From Octopus bimaculoides (Eukaryota): a DNA stretch of 64,000 nt. Shown in pieces: positions 8,861 to 61,749 of this stretch. The position numbers and the translations under genes were made by a program. Position 1 is the stretch's first letter; every line of letters starts with the position of its first letter. The stretch is taken from NCBI RefSeq assembly GCF_001194135.2, contig NC_068988.1:2881288-2945287 (forward strand). The letters are read 5' to 3'. The notes below the pieces were generated by a model. That model was not told the origin of the DNA and did no database searches. It saw nothing but the letters and a program-made list of their open reading frames with translations.

Positions 8861-9779
8861 TGAAGTCTGGTGAGAGACACAAGTAATAACATGTCACGTA
8901 TCGAGGGAAATAGTAGATCTCAGTGGTCTTAGGTATGTAGATGACAGGGAATTCTTACATACTGCCCCTAAACAAAAAATTGGAGACATAAAGAAAGAAA
9001 GAGAAAAGCGGGGGGGGGGTGGAAAAGGAAAAGCAAAGTGTGATAAATATAGAGGAGGGAATAAATATGGAGAAAGAGTTTGGAATGATGGCATAGAACA
9101 TGCATTTTATAGTCAAAAGAGATAATTTGTCTCAATATGAGCTAAGAATGTTTGACATTCTAATGACTGTTGTCAAATATCTGAAATTATTAAACTTCAT
9201 TAATAATAGAAAAAATGGCATTAAAAAATTTCTTTCATATTTATAGGAATTCAACATTCCTAGATTGTACTTTCGCAACCATTTTGAAGAAGGATTATCA
9301 TTATTTATTATTCCATGTGATTGAGAAGATTATGGCATCTGTTTTGCATTTATCTGTGTATGTATGTTTGTATGTATGTATGTATGTATGTTTGTATGTA
9401 TTTTTACATGTATGTATGTACGTATATATGTATATAAGTCTGTACGTACGCACATATGTATGTCATTATTCAGTATATTTCAAGATTTCTTGCCAATAGA
9501 GAAAGAAGCGGTTTCTAACCTAGATCCAAGGTCCCTTCATTGGAATTTCAACATCAACAATAAGGTATTTTTGTTTGCATGTATGTATGTGTGTGTAGAT
9601 TTGTGTGTTTTATGTATGTATTCTCATGCATATAGTTACATATCCAGAGAACGGTGAAAGAGACATGGTGGGACAGTTACTCTAACTAACAGAGTTTGCA
9701 CCTTGCAGATAGCCATTGCTGCCCTGATAATAATAAGCAGGGATGTAGTCCAGTGGTCAAGAACACAGGGGTCAAGATC

Positions 9780-11132: not shown

Positions 11133-11310
11133 TCTTTTATTTGTTTCAGTGATTAGACTGCGGCCATGCTGGGGCACTGCCTTGAAGAAATTTTAGTTGA
11201 ATGAATCGACCCCAGGACTTTTTTTACTAAACCTGGTACTTATTCTATTGGTTTCTTTTGCTGAACCACTAAGTTACAGGGACATAAAACACACCAACAC
11301 CACTTGTCAA
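11133..11310 (-). mobile_element. Family B SINE, 3' half
   Basis: TTTCAGT..GACTGCGGCCATGCTGGGGCAC..TCGACCCCAGGACTT. Confidence 0.75.
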
Positions 11311-11954
11311 ACACACACATGTAGACACACACACACACACACACAAACTAATAAAGTATTCCATCTGGTGAGAGATAGGTATTATTATTTAAAGGACACA
11401 ATACATGTATTAAAGTGCTACTAATAGTTCCATATGTTGAGAAATATCTCAGACATATTCATCAGGCACAAAGCACGTATCATAAAGAACTAAAAAAATT
11501 GAATGAGAGAAGAAACACGAAAAGTTGAGAAGGAAGCATATGGAAAATGTGGAAGATTTATGTGTGTGTGTGTGTGTGTGCGTGTGTGTGCGTGTGTGTA
11601 AATCCATTTGATTCAGTAGATTTCTAAAAGATGGTAATATTTCTAATGATTTAGTCCAGTGAAGAAGTTGGAAAATTCACCACGATGTACTTGTTACTCT
11701 CACTTTCATGTTAGAAGTTTTCTTCAAAGAATGTCATCTTGAAATGACTGTGTATGTATGTGTATGTATAATGTGTACATATGTGTGTGCTTGAATATGT
11801 GTGTGCATGCATGTGTATGTGTTTGTGAGTGTGCATATATATGTACATGTGTGTGTTTATCAACAATGGGAGCATGATCAATTTTAATGTCATAGCTTTA
11901 CCCATACGTACACATCAATATCATTATACACATGCATTTAACTATTTGTGCATA

Positions 11955-14675: not shown

Positions 14676-15394
14676 TAACACTTAACAATTGCAATACTAG
14701 AATGACCACTTGACCAGAGCTTAGATAAAGTGTTTGTCAGGTTGAGTGCATTTGTATTTCCTTACACTTGTTGTGTTGGCATAGTTCTTTGAATGGGCAA
14801 CACCTGCTGTTACTGATCTCCAAGAAACACCAGATGAATTTCCTTTAAATTGAATCCTGCCATCTTATGTAAATTGAAGTCGTATCATCATCATCTTTCG
14901 TGTGATATGAATGGTGACATAAAATGTAGTCTTAGATAGACCTATTTCTAAAGAGACAGTTGTTATTGTGGTAATAACTGATCTTAGAACCATTCAATCA
15001 AAATTGATTTAAGGCTAAGCAAAAGCATAACACATTAACTATTCTCTGATTACTCACTAATTACACCATTTACAGAAGAGATCTTTATTAATTTATGACA
15101 AATGTTCTCAGTCTTAGTGATACGGAAGTGTGAACTGAGATTGTAAGAAACATTTACAATGTATTTTACATGGAAACTTAAAGATTTTTGGTGCATTTTG
15201 GACAGAAAGTTAAAAACTGCTTCAAAAATATATCTTTATACATTTGGGTTAATTTGAACCTGAATATATGATCGCTGTTTCAATTCTCACTGTCCTGTGA
15301 TGCACCCCATGAATTCAAAATTAATGATGCACTTTACATGGAAGGTTAGCAAATACAGGAGAATTGTGCATGTTTTATTTTTTATGTTTTACTT

Positions 15395-15775
15395 GTTTTA
15401 TTCAGTGAATTGTGGCCATGCTGGAGCACTATCTTGAAGGGTTTAACTGAATGAATTGACCCCAATACTTTTATTAAGCCTGGTAATTATTCTATCGGTC
15501 TTTTGTGCTGAACCATGAAGTTATGGAGATGTAATATAACAAACACCATTTGTCAAGTGGTGGTGGTGGTGAGGGCAAGCACACAAACACACACACACAC
15601 ACATGCATATATATGATAGACTTCTTTACCATTTCCAGCTCCCAAATCCACTCATAAAGGCTTTTGGTCAGCTTGAAACTATGGTGGAATACTCTTGCCC
15701 AAAGTGCCACACAATGGGATTGAACTCAAAGTCACATGGATGGAAAGCAAACTTCTTACCATAAAACAACCAAAA
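15395..15775 (-). mobile_element. Family B tRNA-derived SINE, near full length
   Basis: Antisense head (A/B boxes), CCTTGGGCAAG-like core, internal microsatellite, 3' body. Confidence 0.8.
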
Positions 15776-16292: not shown

Positions 16293-16320
16293 TTTGTATA
16301 CACAAATGATTATACTATGA

Positions 16321-16725
16321 TAGGTGCATGCGTGATTGTTTGATAAGAAGCTTGCTTCCCAACCACATGGTTCTGGGTTCAGTGCCACTGTGTGGCATTT
16401 TAGGCAAGTGTCTTCTGCCATAGCCTCGAGCCGACCAAAGCCTTGTGAATGGATTTGGTAAATTGAAAGAAGCCTGTTGCGTATATAAGTGCGTGTGCAT
16501 GTGTTTGTGTCTGTGTTTGTCCCCCACCACTGCTTGACAACCGATGCTGGTGTGTTTACATCCCTGTAACATACCAGCTTGGCTAAAGAGACTGATAGAA
16601 TAAGCACCACACTTTAAAAAGAATAAATACTGGGATTGAACCATTCGACTAAAATTTATCCAGGGTGGTGCCCCAGCATGGCCACATTCTAATGAGTCAA
16701 ACAAATAAATGTAAAAAGAATATTT
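16321..16725 (+). mobile_element. Family B tRNA-derived SINE, full length
   Basis: AGAAGCTTGCTTCCCAACCACATGGTTCTGGGTTCAGTGCC head through CCAGCATGGCCACA..AAACAAATAAA tail. Confidence 0.85.
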
Positions 16726-18027: not shown

Positions 18028-18061
<34 letters not shown>

Positions 18062-18065
18062 TATA

Positions 18066-18441
18066 TAGGTGCAGGGGTGGGTGTGTGGTAAGTAGCTTGC
18101 TTCCCAACCACATAGTTCTGGGTTCAGTCCCACTGCATGACACCTTGGGCAAGTGTCTTTGGGTTGACAAAAGCCTTGTGAGTGGATTTGATGGATGGAA
18201 ACTGAAAGAAGCCCATTGTATATAATATATCCTCATCATCATCATCATCATGGGTTGGACGATTTTACTGAGGACTGGTGAACCAGATGGCGACACCAGG
18301 CTCCAATCTGATTTGGAAGAGTTTCTACAGCTGGATGCCCTTCCTAATGCCAACCACTCAGAGAGTGTAGTGGGTGCATTTACGTGCCACCAGCACGAAG
18401 GCCAGTCAGGAGGTACTGGCAACGGCCACGTGTGTGTATGT

Positions 18442-18473
<32 letters not shown>

Positions 18474-18668
18474 ATTTGTTGCCCCATCATCGCTTGACAA
18501 CTGATGTTGTTGTGTTTACGTCCCGTAACTTAGCAGTTCAGCAAAAGAGAGCGATAGAATAAGTACTAGGCTTACAAAGAATAAGTCCTGGGGTCGATTT
18601 CTTTGACTAAAGGTAGTGCTCCAGCATGGCCGCAGTCAAATGACTGAAACAAATAAAAGAATAAAAGA
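18066..18668 (+). mobile_element. Family B SINE interrupted by an antisense family A insertion
   Basis: 5' half 18066-18225 and 3' half 18430-18668 are collinear with the intact copy at 16321. Confidence 0.85.
18232..18430 (-). mobile_element. Family A retroposon nested in a family B SINE
   Basis: (ATC)n then antisense A body. Confidence 0.85.
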
Positions 18669-21430: not shown

Positions 21431-22274
21431 GTTTGGTAATAATGAACAAACTACTTTGCTAGGCCCATCAGAACATTATATATTTCATCTTTCATTCGCT
21501 CAAACAAAGACAACACATTGCCATTTTAAGTTGGATCACAAAAATATTATGCTGACCTGGTATTCATGCTATTTGGTTTAATATTATTATCATCATTATT
21601 TTGCGCATGTACGTGTGTGTGTCTGGTGTGTTTTTGTGTTTACCCTTGTAACCATGCCCCAATAGCGATGCTTCAAAGAAAAAGTAAATGGCCACAATTG
21701 AAATTGAAATGAAAATAATAAAGATAATTCAGCAAACATTGGAAAAGCATTAAGCGTTAATCAGTCAACAATCAGGACAATCTAAGAGAACAAATAAGAT
21801 TAATGGACATGATTTGTAGCTTGGATGAGAAGAGTCTCCATTCCAATGAAAGTGACAATTGTCACTAAGCAACACAGTGGTTTAATTATTGTCACAGAAC
21901 GACTATTATCAATTTGATTAGCGGATCAAAACCAGTGTAATACACCTATTAACCTTGGTTTAGTGCAAGAAACAGCTTAAAGCATGAACTGCAAGTGAAT
22001 GTTTTTGTGAGAAAGAATTTATTGTGAGTTGGGCAGTTCAATAGTTTCAAAAAGAGAGGAACTTCCTCAGAATTAGAGTGCAAGGCAAGGCTTTGGTGCT
22101 GATGCGCAGAGAGATTATGAAAACGGTGAAAAAAGAAATTACTTGAGAAGGTTACATTGCAGGGTGAATGTTTAATGGATTTTCCAAACTATATCACTCT
22201 CATCTGGTATATTTTGGAAATGAAGTGGATTTTAGGAAGAACACGAAACACACACAAACATGCCTACATATACT

Positions 22275-40384: not shown

Positions 40385-40581
40385 TTTACTCTTTTACTTG
40401 TTTCAGTCATTTGACTGCGGCCATGCTGGAGCACCGCCTTTAGTCGAGTAAATCGATCCCAGGACTTATTCGATGTAAGCCTAGTATTTATGCTATCAGT
40501 CTCTTTTGCCAAATCTCTAGGTTACGGGGATGTAAACACACCAGCATCGGTCGTCAAGCCATGTTGGGGGGACAAATACAG

Positions 40582-40626
<45 letters not shown>

Positions 40627-40790
40627 TACGACGGGCTTCTTTCAGTTTCTGTCTACCAAATCTACTCACAAGGCTTTGGTTGGCCCAAGGCTATAGTAGA
40701 AGACACTTGCCCAAGGTGCCACACAGTGTGACTGAACCCTGAACCATGTGGTTGGTAAGCAAGTTACTTACCACACAGCTACTCCTACAC
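40385..40790 (-). mobile_element. Family B SINE, full length, relatively young
   Basis: Retains CpGs (GACTGCGGCCATGCTGGAGCACCGCC); complete head to tail. Confidence 0.9.
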
Positions 40791-43496: not shown

Positions 43497-43765
43497 CAAA
43501 CATGCAGAACCGCTAAGTTACGGGGACATCAACACACCAACATTGGTTGTCAAGCGATGGTGTAGTGACAAACACAGACACACACACACATATATGTACG
43601 ACGGGCTTCTTTCAGTTTCCATCTACCAAATCCACCGCCAAGGCTTTGGTGGGCCCAAGGCTATAGTAGAAGACACTTACTTGCCCAAGGTGCCAAGCAG
43701 TGGGACTGAACCCAGAACCATGTGGATGGGAAGCAAGCTTCTTACCACACAGCCACTCCTGCACA
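43497..43765 (-). mobile_element. Family B SINE
   Basis: Antisense head and body. Confidence 0.85.
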
Positions 43766-43778
43766 TATATATGTTGTG

Positions 43779-50502: not shown

Positions 50503-51021
50503 AAAGTAGCTCATCCTCAGATGTTTCCAGGAAATCCTCAGAATTTTCCAGGAAGACCAATCCTCGGAACTTTCCAGGAATTCCGTGGAACTTTCCATGA
50601 AGTGCCATCCTCGAAACTGTCCAGGAAGTAGCTCATCCTCAAATGTTTCCGGGAAATCCTCGAAAATTTCCAGGAAGTACCACCATCGGAACTTTCCAGG
50701 AAGTAGCTTATCCTCGGATATTTCCAGGAAACAAGCGGAACTTTCCAGGAAAGACCATCTTTGGAACTTTCCAGGAAGTAGCTCACCCTCCGATATTTCA
50801 AGGAAATCCTCAGAAGTTTCCAGGAAATATCACCCTCGGAACTTTCCAGGAAGTAGCTCGTCCTTGGATCTTCCCAGGAAATCCTCGGGACTTACCAGGA
50901 AGTACCATCCTCTGGACTTTCCAGGAAATACCTCATCCTCGGATCTTTCCAGGAAGTACATCATCCTCTGATCTTTCCAGGAAGTCCTCGGAACTTTCCA
51001 GGAAGTCACCCCGGAACTTTC
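50503..51021. repeat. Minisatellite of 21-28-bp TTCCAGGAA units forming a 75-bp higher-order repeat
   Basis: GTAGCT anchors at 50628, 50703, 50778 and 50853 (exact 75-bp period); 15 TTCC(A/G)GGAA. Confidence 0.95.
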
Positions 51022-51368
51022 TTTACAGTTTCTACTCAAATTCTACTTGGAAGGTATTAACAAAACAAAACTACTAGAAGACATTTGTGCAATGTACAGC
51101 ACTATGGGATTGTTGTGTCAACGCCCCCAAGCAAAGGAGTAGGATCACCCAAGACATATAAATAGAGGTAGTCTAGCCATGGTAGAGCAGTTGAGTAGCC
51201 GTCATGTAGCGGTTGAGTAGAGATCATTCGAAGGTGCTAGATAGCAGTAGCTTGAGACATAACAGGGATAGAACCCAGAAAACCATGGTTGAACAGCAAA
51301 CTTCTGAACCACATGTCTGCATCTGGACCATGATCTGTACATATACATGACATAGGCATGTCTATATT

Positions 51369-52772: not shown

Positions 52773-52927
52773 AATTCTTTTAATGATTCTTTTATTGATG
52801 GAATCCTGGTTGTGATGTTTCTTTAAAACACTCCCATGTTATGAGTCTTAGATGGGAAAATGTGTACTGTATAACTTCAAGCCTCATCTCGAATGAAAAC
52901 TATGTGAAGCAAATGTGTTTGAGAAGG

Positions 52928-53085
52928 TGCAGTCATGGCTGTGTGGTTAAGAAGCTTGCTTCCCAATCACGTGGTTTTAGGTTCAACCCCATGGTGTAGC
53001 ACTGAGCAAGTGTCTTCTACTATTGCACTGGGACAACCAAAGATTTGCAAGTGATTTGTTGCAATTAAAAGATGTCTATCATATG
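52928..53085 (+). mobile_element. Family B SINE 5' half
   Basis: CATGGCTGTGTGGTTAAGAAGCTTGCTTCCCAA..GGTTCAACCCC. Confidence 0.75.
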
Positions 53086-53247
53086 TATGTATGTATGTAT
53101 ACATGTATGTATGTATGTGTGTGTGTGTATGCATATATGCATGTATGTATGTATGCATTTATGTATGTATGTATGTCCAGCATTTGCCATGATCGATCAC
53201 TATCCACTAAACCTTTTCTATTTTCTCTCCCTGTTTATTTATGTGTT

Positions 53248-55002: not shown

Positions 55003-55109
55003 TGGACAGCCTTGTTTTTGCAGATTATCGGCAGTGTTACTCATTTACATCTATTTGCTTGCCTGGCAGTGTTACTCATTTACATCTATCACAATGTCAA
55101 GGCAAGGAG

Positions 55110-55275
55110 ACACACACATACATTGGGCTTCTCCCAGTTTTCACCTACCGAATTCACTCATAATATTTTGATCAGTTCAAGGCTATGGAGGAAGACACTT
55201 GCCAATGGTGCTATGCAGTGGAATTGAACCTGAAACAATGTAATTGGGAATCAAATTTGTTAACCACATAGCCAA
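55110..55275 (-). mobile_element. Family B SINE 5' half
   Basis: Antisense head and GAAGACACTTGCC core. Confidence 0.7.
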
Positions 55276-59289: not shown

Positions 59290-59525
59290 GCAGAATCCTT
59301 ACCATACCAGGAAAAAGTGCCTAGAAGCACTTCGTCCTGCTTTACATCCTGAATTCAAATTCTGACAAGTTTGCTTTTGTCTTTCAGGGCCAATAAAATA
59401 AGTTTCAGTTGAGTTTTGGAGTTGATATATTCGACTTCCCCCTACCCCAGCCCCTGAAATTGCTGGCCTTGTGCCAAAATTTGAAATCATCATCATCATC
59501 ATCATTATTATTGTAATTATTATTA

Positions 59526-59580
<55 letters not shown>

Positions 59581-59614
59581 CATCATCATCATCATCAACG
59601 TCATCATCAACATT

Positions 59615-59673
<59 letters not shown>

Positions 59674-59712
59674 TATTATTATTATTATCATTATTATTAT
59701 TATTATTATTAT
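59290..59712 (-). mobile_element. Family C SINE with about 225-bp compound (ATC/ATT)n tail
   Basis: Antisense head and core at 59290-59485; tail 59486-59712. Confidence 0.8.
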
Positions 59713-60144
59713 TAATAGAAGTGTTTGCTGTAGAAGTGAATATAGCAAATAATCGTTTACTGAGATATTCCTTCTTATTACCAAGATGATTTCACCAGCT
59801 TTTTAAATTAGATTTAGCAGCTGCTGGTGGGAAGTGAGTGAGTGTGAAGAAGACTATTTGAACTTAACTGGTCTTGTCAGCTTTTGTCAAGTTTCATTGA
59901 TATTTGTTGATATTTGGGATTGGGAAAAAAAAAAACATACAATTTCCCACAAATTGTATTTCATGCTGTTTTGCTGTGAAAGCTGAGCTGATTGAATCCA
60001 AACTACCAAATTGTTGCTGGTTCATATCCTGCTGTAAGTGCTGTCCACTGTCCATGGACAAACAAATTGGTTTTCTTCGCTTAGCTGGAAATAAGAAAAA
60101 CAGGGAAGTATTTTAAATTTTTATTTTTAGATTCAGGCATCGGT

Positions 60145-60270: not shown

Positions 60271-60377
60271 TGCACATTTGTGTGTATGTGTATATATACA
60301 CACACATATATATATATATGCACATATACACACATATGTATATATACACACACACATTTATATATCTACACACACAA

Positions 60378-61010
60378 GACACAAGATGTGATCTATTTCT
60401 AGTGCATTAATTGTCCACGTTAGTGGTCGACGTTATTTTTTAAAATGTACCTTAATCCCCTGAGATTGCAGATAATATTTCTGAATCTCTTTGATTCTTT
60501 AAATGTGCTGGCCCCCTGATAATTAATCGATATTAATTAATATATTAATATATGACTAATTACCAGATCTTATAATAATATTTACCCATTACTCATGTTC
60601 TCATACTGAATATATTCGACGCAGTAAATATTTTCTGCGGATATATTCCTGGAATTAGCGCGCCAAAACGAAGACTTTTGAATTTTACCATTAAGCTGTA
60701 ATTAGCAGAACCATATGCACGCGCACCCATGGCGGTGGGCAACTATGTATACGATTCTGATAATTGCTGCTACATTACAAATCAGGCTGATGAGGAATAG
60801 ACAAATGGTAAGAATTTGTTAAATCCGAAACCTGGTTCCTGTTTAATAATGATTTTTTTAAGGTGATTTTAAATGTCTTGCCCACTCACGTATTTGGTAT
60901 GCTGCTATATTTCATGTTGAGAACTTTTTAGGTCTTAATAGACACAAGATGTGATCTATTTCTAGCGCATTAATTGTCCATGTTAGTGGTCGACGTTATT
61001 TTTTAAAATG
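60378..61010 (+). mobile_element. Retrozyme-like or Penelope-pLTR-like element: 563-bp unit plus 70-bp terminal redundancy
   Basis: Direct repeats at 60378-60447 and 60941-61010 (68/70 identical); internal hammerhead and several hairpins. Confidence 0.65.
60783..60841 (+). ncRNA. Type I hammerhead ribozyme, intact core
   Basis: Stem I CAGG/CCTG; CTGATGA 60787-60793; 13-position stem II (two A.A mismatches) with GGTAAGA loop; GAAA 60827-60830; palindromic stem III ACC-T-GGT; GUU triplet. Confidence 0.8.
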
Positions 61011-61050
61011 CACACACACAGATAGATAGATAGTAATATGTTTGTGTTTA

Positions 61051-61745
61051 TACAAGGTCTGATCAATAAGTAACTGGACTGTTGCCATAGTAACGAAGCT
61101 ATAGCATACAGAGTAAAGCTGCTTGACAAAAATTGACCTTGAACTTTGTTGTGTGTGCACAGCAAGTTTTAACATTCTAGCTCACTTCTTCTGTTTACAG
61201 CAGTGCTTAGAAGGAGTGTGATCATCACATTGACAATGACAGAGAAAAAGGATTATGCCAAGTTGCAGCAAGTGTATGCAGAAGGGTGTATGAACCATAC
61301 ACAAGTGTACAAGTGGTTCGGACGTTTCCAATATGGCAGAAAAAATGTTGATATTGGCGAACGTTCGGGGAGACCCACAGCTAGCAGAACTGAGAAAAAC
61401 ATCACAGGTGTGCTGGAAAATCATCGAAGCATGATCCATGAGTTATCAGAGGGTGTGCAGATTAGTTATGGTTCAGTTCAGTCCATTATCACTGAAGATT
61501 TGGGTATGAGATGTGTGTCTGCCAAGTTTGTGCCAAAACTGATTTCAGCTGACCAAAAAGACACTTGGGTTTCAGTTACACAAGATCTCCTTCATTGTGT
61601 TGAGAACGATGAAAACTGTTTGGAAACTTTGTGTAGGCTTCTGAGTAGGAATCGCCAAACTTTTGGCAAAATTTGAAGCTGATTCTCTGCTCAACTTCTT
61701 TCTCTGTCATGGTCAATACAACAATCACACACTACACATCTTCAG
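61051..61745 (+). mobile_element. Mariner (Tc1/mariner) deletion derivative: 5' TIR plus transposase N-terminus
   Basis: TA-CAAGGTCTGATCAATAAG TIR; ORF 61203-61676 with HTH motifs (VYKWFGRF, ERSGRP) and SAKFVPKL (WVPR-like); no DD34D domain. Confidence 0.9.
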
Positions 61746-61749
61746 AGTA

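What the first reader, a model, noticed from the sequence alone, without database searches (positions are those of the whole stretch)
60378..61010. Retrozyme-like element: 563-nt structured unit with a hammerhead, integrated as a 1.12-mer
Seen: 70-bp direct repeats (68/70) bound a 563-bp period inserted in a CA/TA microsatellite. There is no long ORF, no TG..CA/PBS/PPT LTR signature and no TIR. The unit is a chain of hairpins (60521-60540, 60608-60648, 60700-60765 with a 10/11 outer stem) followed by an intact hammerhead. Established: non-LTR retrozymes in metazoans are ribozyme-processed repeats expressed as circular RNAs, and Penelope-like elements form partial tandems with hammerheads in their pseudo-LTRs. 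Inference: terminal redundancy is what reverse transcription slightly more than once round a circular RNA would give. This may be an undescribed cephalopod retrozyme or a PLE-dependent circRNA family.
Basis: partly seen in the sequence, partly recalled or inferred. Interest (0 to 1): 0.85.

Follow-up and report, generated by a model that had tools for sequence, protein, structure and literature searches.

The report
Hammerhead-bearing retroelement copy in octopus DNA
A 634-base non-coding insert in an octopus-like genome carries a hammerhead self-cleaving RNA motif and overlapping ends. It looks like a young, now inert copy of a small parasitic element of a known type (a "retrozyme", copied by Penelope-like retrotransposons), so it is probably real but not a new kind of thing.

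Summary
The sequence features are real. A 563-bp unit plus a 71-bp repeat of its own start (60377-61010) sits between CA-repeat flanks. It has no ORF over 49 aa, no LTR or TIR signature, and folds more strongly than shuffles. It holds the only sequence in the 64-kb window that fits a strict type I hammerhead descriptor (60783-41; cut site 60837/38).

Caveats on the hammerhead:
- No Rfam hammerhead model matches it.
- Helix III is only 2 bp.
- The cleavage triplet is GUU.
- A competing fold is predicted to dominate in the monomer, as in the weak, dimer-dependent hammerheads of Penelope-like elements.

New here: the element is the least CpG-depleted 634 bp of the window (o/e 1.05 against 0.29). 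The only two differences between its terminal repeats are CpG/TpG. Both point to a recent insertion.

The best reading is a dead "unit plus tail" copy of a short non-autonomous element mobilised by Penelope-like elements (a non-LTR retrozyme derivative). With one hammerhead it cannot release a unit-length RNA.

Untested: copy number, hammerhead conservation, a partner element and any circular RNA. No cephalopod genome could be searched. The overlapping ends fit a tandem linear template as well as a circle.

If confirmed, this is a new member of a known kind, of moderate interest.

The parts
60285..60376 (.). Left flank: (TA/CA)n microsatellite, the presumed target. Its last 9 nt, ACACACACA (60368-76), recur at 61012-20.
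60377..61010 (+). The whole insert: 634 bp, equal to 1.13 units of 563 bp. Non-coding, 34% G+C, CpG o/e 1.05.
60377..60447 (+). Left copy of the 71-nt terminal redundancy. It starts with an AC-rich stem-loop (AGACACA-AGA-UGUGAUCU).
60516..60566 (+). AT-rich nested hairpin, including the 8-bp TAATTAAT/ATTAATTA stem at 60520-39.
60608..60648 (+). Hairpin GAAUAUAUUCG..CGCAG/CUGCG..CGGAUAUAUUC, with one G-U pair on the + strand.
60700..60765 (+). Long hairpin with a 10/11 outer stem (AAUUAGCAGAA/UUCUGAUAAUU) and a G+C-rich interior.
60773..60851 (+). Type I hammerhead motif.
- Helix I: 60773-86 with 60838-51 (4 bp, a U.U mismatch, 2 bp, a 2x2 loop, 5 bp).
- Core: CUGAUGA at 60787-93.
- Helix II: 60794-60826 (3 bp, a 3x3 loop, 7 bp, a 7-nt loop).
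- GAAA at 60827-30.
- Helix III: A60830-U60836 and C60831-G60835, with loop CUG.
- Position 17 is U60837.
   Evidence: Rfam negative
60837..60838 (+). Predicted self-cleavage site (GUU^C).
   Evidence: inferred from hammerhead numbering
60940..61010 (+). Right copy of the 71-nt terminal redundancy. It differs from the left copy only at two CpG/TpG sites (60966, 60981).
61011..61035 (.). Right flank: CACACACACA plus (GATA)3.

Best explanation
This is one recent, now inert retrotransposed copy of a short (563-nt), non-coding, structured element that carries a type I hammerhead. It most resembles a non-LTR retrozyme, or an internally deleted derivative of a Penelope-like element (PLE), mobilised in trans by a PLE reverse transcriptase and GIY-YIG endonuclease.

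Inferred mechanism:
1. A longer-than-unit RNA (a tandem-array transcript or a circle) was reverse-transcribed from an internal start about 173 nt 3' of the hammerhead cut site. That start corresponds to 61010.
2. Copying continued for 634 nt, 71 nt more than one unit. This gave a 'unit plus tail' partial tandem inserted in a (CA)n/(TA)n microsatellite.
3. In the source array the hammerhead would cut multimeric RNA into 563-nt monomers. Because of its minimal, near-palindromic helix III it would probably act as a dimer or with protein help.
4. This copy has a single hammerhead, so it can be cut once at most and cannot release a monomer.

Shown here: the anatomy, the above-chance hammerhead motif, the excess RNA structure, the absence of coding capacity, the microsatellite flanks, the lack of CpG depletion and the octopus-like host.

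Inferred: retrotransposition, the PLE partner, ribozyme activity, family status and the form of the template.
For: - Terminal redundancy of 71-74 nt at a 563-nt spacing.
- CA-repeat flanks with a shared 9-nt ACACACACA. PLEs are reported to show partial tandems, a 30-40-bp tail and microsatellite target bias (PMC8557442, PMC11167929).
- The only strict hammerhead hit in 64 kb lies inside the element. Shuffles give 0.04 per 64 kb, and about 1e-6 for the extended motif within 634 nt.
- Long helix II (10 bp), G10.1-C11.1 and a minimal near-palindromic helix III (ACCUGGU, self-duplex -5.5 kcal/mol) resemble the PLE-type hammerheads of PMC4209133.
- Unit fold z = -4.7 on the + strand, against +0.6 to -2.9 for 12 control segments.
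- No protein similarity in any frame. No tRNA and no other Rfam family above its gathering score.
- CpG o/e is 1.05 against 0.29 for the window. The six highest of 605 sliding tiles all overlap the element, and the next best is 0.75.
- Both repeat mismatches are CpG/TpG, as expected if identical repeats have only begun to decay.
- The window shares SINE-like and mariner-like repeats with Octopus sinensis.
- O. vulgaris is reported to hold 30 young Penelope families (PMC13282606).
Against: - Only one copy is seen. There is none elsewhere in the window or in 22 kb of O. sinensis, and no cephalopod genome could be searched. A repeat family is therefore assumed, not shown.
- No Rfam hammerhead model matches.
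- As a monomer the hammerhead fold (-10.2 kcal/mol) loses to a fold that pairs CAGG with the first CCUG (-14.9; 74% against 24% of the ensemble). Helix III has about zero predicted probability.
- GUU is an unusual cleavage triplet.
- The descriptor thresholds were set after seeing the motif. Two of 32 unrelated bacterial loci that share the core and helix II pass the strict descriptor by chance.
- No PLE ORF is present in the window.
- High CpG could also reflect a germline-unmethylated patch rather than youth.
Confidence: 

Rival explanations
1. One reading: a true retrozyme whose 563-nt circular RNA was the template, with reverse transcriptase running 1.13 times round the circle.
For: The start point is permuted relative to the hammerhead cut site: the insert begins 102 nt 3' of the cut rather than at it. 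That excludes a linear monomer as template. In the circular fold, outer helix I holds the two ends together. Copying of circles beyond unit length has been proposed for PLEs and retrozymes (PMC4209133, PMC7229834).
Against: A tandem linear multimer gives exactly the same product. For the one PLE studied in vitro, unprocessed multimeric RNA was the dominant substrate, hammerhead mutants inserted normally, and no RNA-seq reads ended at the cut site (PMC11167929). No RNA data are available here. The hammerhead is predicted to be weak as a monomer.
Confidence: 0.25
2. A chance hammerhead-like motif inside an unrelated low-copy repeat or local duplication. On this reading it is not a ribozyme-bearing mobile element at all.
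For: Only a single copy was observed. Rfam is negative. The strict descriptor is passed by chance in bacterial coding DNA. About 5 full-motif chance hits are expected per 2.8 Gb. Helix III is marginal and the triplet is GUU.
Against: The joint chance of the motif falling in this particular 634 nt is about 1e-6. The element also stands out independently in three ways: partial-tandem ends in a microsatellite, excess structure and the window's highest CpG o/e. A replication-slippage duplication would not produce a CpG-undepleted block.
Confidence: 0.18
3. The edge or remnant of a 563-bp satellite (tandem DNA) array, spread by DNA-level mechanisms rather than by reverse transcription.
For: A 1.13-mer is formally a short tandem array. 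Animal hammerhead repeats were first described as satellite DNA in newts (cited in PMC7229834).
Against: The borders are sharp, with a possible 9-bp duplication in a microsatellite. There are no further monomers nearby. The class of hammerhead-bearing 'satellites' is now itself read as retrozymes (PMC7229834).
Confidence: 0.07
4. An integrated cDNA of an exogenous viroid-like circular RNA with a single-polarity hammerhead, not a vertically inherited genomic family.
For: CpG o/e is 1.05 in a host background of 0.29. The unit is compact, structured and non-coding. The ends are longer than one unit.
Against: A young endogenous element explains the CpG content equally well. The 34% G+C matches the host. 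No related sequence was found in the viral or metagenome collections searched, although only exact patterns were used.
Confidence: 0.05
5. An assembly artefact: a false partial duplication at a join.
For: The window contains N-runs (186 N). False duplications do occur in assemblies.
Against: There are no Ns within 10 kb of the element (one search places the N-containing ORFs near 27.8, 31.3 and 48.4 kb). The two copies differ only at CpG sites, in opposite directions, which looks like decay rather than allelic stitching.
Confidence: 0.03

Closest known systems
Metazoan non-LTR retrozymes (Cervera & de la Pena 2020, PMC7229834; Li, Clavereau & Pollet 2026, bioRxiv 10.64898/2026.07.22.740005)
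   Same: Non-coding, low G+C and a type I hammerhead. No LTR, PBS or PPT. The unit length lies within the reported range of consensus lengths (51-972 bp). Any target duplication is longer than 4 bp. 'Monomer derivatives' of such families are reported to be common and dispersed.
   Different: There are only 1.13 units and one hammerhead, not a tandem with a hammerhead in every unit. At 563 nt it is longer than the 170-400-nt circles shown experimentally. Its helix III is weaker than described for invertebrate retrozyme hammerheads. Family status and RNA are unknown. No cephalopod example was found in the papers searched.
Minimal hammerheads in pseudo-LTRs of Penelope-like elements (Cervera & de la Pena 2014, PMC4209133; Frangieh et al. 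2024, PMC11167929)
   Same: Type I, long helix II, G10.1-C11.1, and a tiny near-palindromic helix III that suggests action as a dimer or with protein help. Partial-tandem insertion with a short terminal extension. Microsatellite or AT-rich target. The 3' end of the insert lies 173 nt downstream of the cut site, against about 85-92 nt in the Anolis PLE (PAc).
   Different: There is no RT/GIY-YIG ORF in or near the element. The period is 563 bp, not about 3 kb. Helix I is longer (11 bp). The bulged nucleotide after A9 is absent. The redundancy of 71 bp exceeds the usual 30-40-bp tail.
Plant LTR retrozymes (Cervera et al. 2016, PMC4918200)
   Same: Non-autonomous, hammerhead-bearing, with a proposed circular RNA intermediate of similar size (600-1000 nt).
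   Different: The plant elements have type III hammerheads inside LTRs of about 350 bp, plus PBS/PPT, 4-bp target duplications and high G+C. None of this applies here.

Membership tests
Hammerhead ribozyme, type I | Conserved core C3-U4-G5-A6-N7-G8-A9 and G12-A13-A14 | tested here: met
   CUGAUGA at 60787-93 and GAA at 60827-29
Hammerhead ribozyme, type I | A15.1-U16.1 pair and a non-G at position 17 | tested here: met
   A60830-U60836, with U60837 at position 17. The triplet GUU obeys the NUH rule but is not the usual GUC.
Hammerhead ribozyme, type I | Three helices around the core, with helix I open | tested here: inconclusive
   Helix I has 11 bp and helix II 10 bp. Helix III has only 2 bp with a 3-nt loop and about zero predicted probability as a monomer. 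A competing fold is 4.7 kcal/mol more stable.
Hammerhead ribozyme, type I | Match to a curated covariance model (the Rfam hammerhead families) | tested here: not met
   No hammerhead hit at gathering score, or at E<=10 in 801 nt or in 96 nt
Hammerhead ribozyme, type I | Conservation and covariation among homologues; self-cleavage | not testable with these tools
   No second copy was obtainable. There is no wet assay.
Non-LTR retrozyme | Tandem repeats with a type I hammerhead in every unit | tested here: not met
   1.13 units and one hammerhead. The redundancy (60940-61010) stops 365 nt short of where a second hammerhead would begin. At best it is a monomer derivative.
Non-LTR retrozyme | Non-coding, no LTR/PBS/PPT, low G+C | tested here: met
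   Longest open frame 49 aa. No protein hit. Ends AGAC..AATG. G+C 34%.
Non-LTR retrozyme | Multi-copy family in the genome | not testable with these tools
   No cephalopod genome is searchable. There is no copy in the other 63 kb of the window or in 22 kb of O. sinensis.
Non-LTR retrozyme | Expressed as linear and circular unit-length RNA | not testable with these tools
   No RNA data
Penelope-like element (autonomous) | ORF with RT and GIY-YIG endonuclease | tested here: not met
   No protein similarity for any frame of the element. No ORF of 90 aa or more other than low-complexity ones and a mariner fragment. No RT or GIY-YIG motif context anywhere in the window.
Penelope-like element (integration signature) | Partial tandem or tail, and a microsatellite or AT-rich target | tested here: met
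   71-nt redundancy and (TA/CA)n flanks, compared with PMC8557442 and PMC11167929
SINE | Head derived from tRNA, 5S or 7SL | tested here: not met
   No tRNA. No such Rfam match at E<=10.
LTR retrotransposon / TRIM / plant-type retrozyme | LTRs with TG..CA, PBS and PPT; for the plant type, the hammerhead inside the LTR | tested here: not met
   The repeats are 71 nt and run AGAC..AATG. The hammerhead lies outside them.

The most novel reading that the evidence does not exclude
The insert is a cDNA copy of an exogenous viroid-like circular RNA (about 563 nt, hammerhead on one polarity) captured in an octopus genome. That would explain why it is the only CpG-undepleted block in a strongly CpG-depleted region and why no second copy was seen.
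Probability: 0.05. Interest if true: 0.85.

Novelty: new member of a known kind. Interest (0 to 1): 0.4.

Why it matters
If a family of these units exists in octopods, it would extend hammerhead retrozymes to cephalopods. The papers searched describe none there, although Penelope elements are reported as abundant and recently active in octopus. It would also give a fairly large (563-nt) ribozyme-processed RNA to look for in a lineage known for unusual RNA biology.

The copy is young and its junctions are clean. It could therefore help map where a PLE-type reverse transcriptase starts and stops on a short template. That bears on the open question of whether circles or tandem transcripts are the template.

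If it proves to be a lone copy, it is a curiosity only.

Tried and rejected
1. Rfam at gathering score on the window, and at E<=10 on 801 nt and on 96 nt. No ribozyme family matched. The only hits were microsatellite look-alikes of mir-297, mir-466 and similar.
2. Peptides from the longest open stretches of five of the six frames, searched against 5.8 billion proteins. Nothing scored at E<=10. The database appears to hold only annotated octopus proteins, not ORFs called on raw octopus assemblies, so this says nothing about copy number. It only shows there is no PLE coding remnant.
3. A gapped hammerhead pattern scanned in the metagenome, prokaryote-genome and viral collections. It gave 16, 16 and 0 matches. 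All were unrelated bacterial coding DNA.
4. Two exact element strings in viral contigs gave 0 matches.
5. Sampling octopus DNA through protein look-ups. One 22-kb O. sinensis locus (L033) was obtained and holds no copy. A search with SINE-derived peptides gave 3 proteins, none in the position index.
6. A look-up of the mariner ORF found it not on record.
Pasting about 30,000 residues was judged not worth the cost. A motif grep replaced it and found no RT context.
8. nhmmer of the unit against the window plus L033 gave self hits only.
9. Alternative hammerhead registers were rejected. A longer helix III (60830-33 with 60861-64) puts G at position 17, and the loose-descriptor variants have a 1-bp helix III.
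10. SINE, TRIM/LTR and MITE readings were rejected.
11. The supplements of PMC7229834 do not mention cephalopods. PMC4209133 has no supplements held as text. The supplement of PMC13282606 holds no repeat library.

Full report
**What is there**

The window is AT-rich eukaryotic DNA (35% G+C, 186 N) full of microsatellites. Positions 60377-60450 and 60940-61013 form a direct repeat of 74 nt, 71/74 identical, spaced 563 nt apart. The third mismatch sits at the junction. The insert is therefore 60377-61010: one 563-bp unit plus 71 bp (69/71 identical) that repeat its start, or 1.13 units.

To the left lies a (TA/CA)n tract (60285-76). To the right lie CACACACACA and (GATA)3. The string ACACACACA occurs on both sides (60368-76 and 61012-20). 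It is either a 9-bp target duplication or just the split microsatellite.

The longest open stretch in any frame is 49 aa. The ends read AGAC...AATG, so there is no TG..CA and no terminal inverted repeat.

**Is the hammerhead more than chance?**

I wrote a type I descriptor requiring:
- helix I of at least 4 bp;
- CUGANGA;
- helix II of at least 3 bp;
- GAAA;
- helix III of at least 2 bp including A15.1-U16.1;
- a non-G at position 17.

It hits once in 64 kb on both strands, at 60783-60841. Four hundred dinucleotide-preserving shuffles give 0.04 hits per 64 kb.

The real motif goes further. Helix I extends to 11 pairs of 14 positions (60773-86 with 60838-51). Helix II has 3 bp, a 3x3 loop and 7 bp. 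Adding those features lowers the expectation to about 1e-4 per 64 kb, about 5 per 2.8-Gb genome, and about 1e-6 inside a given 634 nt.

These thresholds were chosen after seeing the motif. Two of 32 unrelated bacterial loci that happen to share the core and helix II also pass the strict descriptor. The motif alone is therefore suggestive. Its position inside an independently odd element is what makes chance unlikely.

**How good a hammerhead is it?**

- No Rfam hammerhead model matches: not at gathering score, nor at E<=10 in 801 nt or in 96 nt.
- Helix III is A-U plus C-G closed by a 3-nt loop.
- The triplet before the cut is GUU, not the usual GUC.
- The hammerhead fold scores -10.2 kcal/mol. 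An alternative in which CAGG pairs with the first of the two CCUG repeats scores -14.9. The ensemble splits 24% to 74%, and helix III has about zero probability.
- The helix III segment ACCUGGU is a near-palindrome and can pair with a second copy (-5.5 kcal/mol).

A long helix II, G10.1-C11.1 and a tiny palindromic helix III that implies dimers are the traits Cervera and de la Pena describe for hammerheads in PLE pseudo-LTRs, which cleave poorly in vitro (PMC4209133). The Anolis PLE hammerhead cleaves only with its protein present (PMC11167929). The bulged nucleotide after A9, typical of those minimal motifs, is absent here.

**Other properties of the unit**

- Folded from cut site to cut site, the 563-nt RNA has z = -4.7 on the + strand and -4.1 on the - strand. 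Twelve 563-nt control segments of the window range from +0.6 to -2.9.
- Peptides from the longest open stretches of five of the six frames find no protein at E<=10 among 5.8 billion. The unit holds no recognisable PLE coding remnant.
- There is no tRNA and no other RNA family above its gathering score.

**New observation: CpG content**

The element has 19 CpG and an o/e of 1.05. The window as a whole has 0.29, the 2 kb on either side have 0.33 and 0.26, the adjacent mariner-like fragment has 0.32, and four SINE-like copies have 0.37-0.54. In 605 sliding 634-nt tiles, the six highest values all overlap the element, and the next best is 0.75.

The only two differences between the terminal repeats are CpG/TpG, one in each copy (60403 T against 60966 C; 60418 C against 60981 T). 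None of the non-CpG positions differ.

I read this as repeats that were identical at insertion and have only begun CpG decay. The insert would then be young compared with its surroundings. That is an inference: a germline-unmethylated patch would look the same.

**Host and context**

- The ORF at 61203-61676 is a mariner-type transposase N-terminus (HTH_48, E = 7e-4, below Pfam's cut-off). Its best named relative is 'GVQW3 [Octopus sinensis]' at 59% identity.
- The O. sinensis locus around that gene (L033) shares the mariner-like segment (about 75%) and a roughly 400-bp SINE-like family (70-86%; one 117-bp piece at 93%) with the window. The window is therefore octopod or close to it.
- The element is not part of the mariner. 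L033 has the mariner segment but nothing resembling the element.
- Octopus genomes are reported to carry many Penelope elements. O. vulgaris has 30 families with young insertions (PMC13282606; also PMC8967140). A plausible autonomous partner therefore exists in the lineage.
- No RT or GIY-YIG ORF is present in this window.

**Mechanism**

PLE insertions characteristically form partial tandems, carry a 30-40-bp tail at one end and favour microsatellite or AT-rich targets (PMC8557442). For the Anolis element, reverse transcription starts inside the RNA, about 85-92 nt 3' of the hammerhead cut. Multimeric unprocessed RNA is the dominant template, and hammerhead mutants insert normally (PMC11167929).

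Here the 3' end of the insert lies 173 nt 3' of the predicted cut, and copying ran 634 nt. The 5' junction falls in an AC-rich stem-loop (AGACACAAG) next to the (CA)n target, so microhomology may have set it.

The insert does not begin at the cut site, which rules out a linear monomer as template. A tandem transcript and a circle both remain possible.

With one hammerhead, this copy can be cut once but cannot release a monomer. It is a product, not a source.

**Comparison and membership**

It works like a non-LTR retrozyme or PLE-derived non-autonomous element. These have recently been argued to be one and the same (bioRxiv 10.64898/2026.07.22.740005, which also reports consensus lengths of 51-972 bp and frequent dispersed monomers).

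It does not meet the definition of an active retrozyme, which requires a tandem with a hammerhead in every unit. Family status, hammerhead conservation and RNA could not be tested.

I found no description of a cephalopod retrozyme in the papers searched.

**Limits**

No searchable collection held cephalopod DNA apart from one 22-kb locus. All pattern scans returned unrelated bacterial matches or nothing. Attempts to sample more octopus DNA failed. The key test, copy number with permuted start points and covariation in the hammerhead, remains to be done.

**Verdict**

The most likely reading (about 0.55) is a young, inert 'unit plus tail' copy of a hammerhead-bearing element mobilised by a PLE. 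The circle-template version is a subset of that reading, at about 0.25. A chance motif in an unrelated duplication stands at about 0.18. If confirmed, this is a new member of a known kind; interest 0.4.

Noticed in passing
window 61047-61746: A mariner-like fragment lies directly 3' of the element. The ORF at 61203-61676 has a weak Mos1 HTH_48 match (E = 7e-4, below Pfam's cut-off), and its best named hit is 'GVQW3 [Octopus sinensis]' at 59%. The segment 61625-61746 matches the same O. sinensis region in reverse orientation, and 61216-47 and 61699-730 form a 32-nt inverted repeat. This suggests a rearranged or hairpin-like mariner derivative.
   Followed up: partly
window 16320-16709, 18046-18660, 40389-40790, 43503-43772, 11133-11348, 15387-15761, 52925-53126, 55108-55275: A SINE-like interspersed repeat of about 400 bp occurs at least eight times in the window. 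It matches O. sinensis L033 20803-21200 at 69-86%. It produces recurring spurious ORF peptides such as 'SGTEPRTMWLGSKLLTT' and 'APTTLSEWLALGRASSCRNS'.
   Followed up: partly
whole window: CpG depletion is strong throughout (o/e 0.29; median of 634-nt tiles 0.26), implying heavy germline methylation. Apart from the element, the next highest tiles (about 0.7-0.75) lie near 29.8-30.0 kb and 3.7 kb.
   Followed up: no
window 59486-59714: A large (ATC/ATT)n trinucleotide microsatellite (about 69 units, 91% matches) lies 660 bp upstream of the element.
   Followed up: no
window 50585-51077: Overlapping ORFs in two frames show a periodic peptide (…RNFPGSSS…SRK…), which indicates a minisatellite-type tandem repeat. 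No Pfam match.
   Followed up: no
window ~27.7-27.9 kb, ~31.3-31.5 kb, ~48.4 kb: Runs of N (186 in all) sit inside microsatellites. These are assembly gaps, and none is near the element.
   Followed up: no
window 60300-60389: The Rfam E-value hits to mir-297, mir-466, mir-1277 and similar are all on the TA/CA microsatellite and far below gathering scores. They are low-complexity artefacts.
   Followed up: yes
window 22017-22073 (-): A second hit to the loose hammerhead descriptor only (helix I 3 bp, helix II 2 bp, helix III 1 bp). About 0.6 such hits per 64 kb are expected by chance, so it was treated as noise.
   Followed up: partly
window 8874-9122 (+): An open stretch contains 'YVDD' without any other reverse-transcriptase context. 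It is probably chance and was not scanned against Pfam.
   Followed up: no
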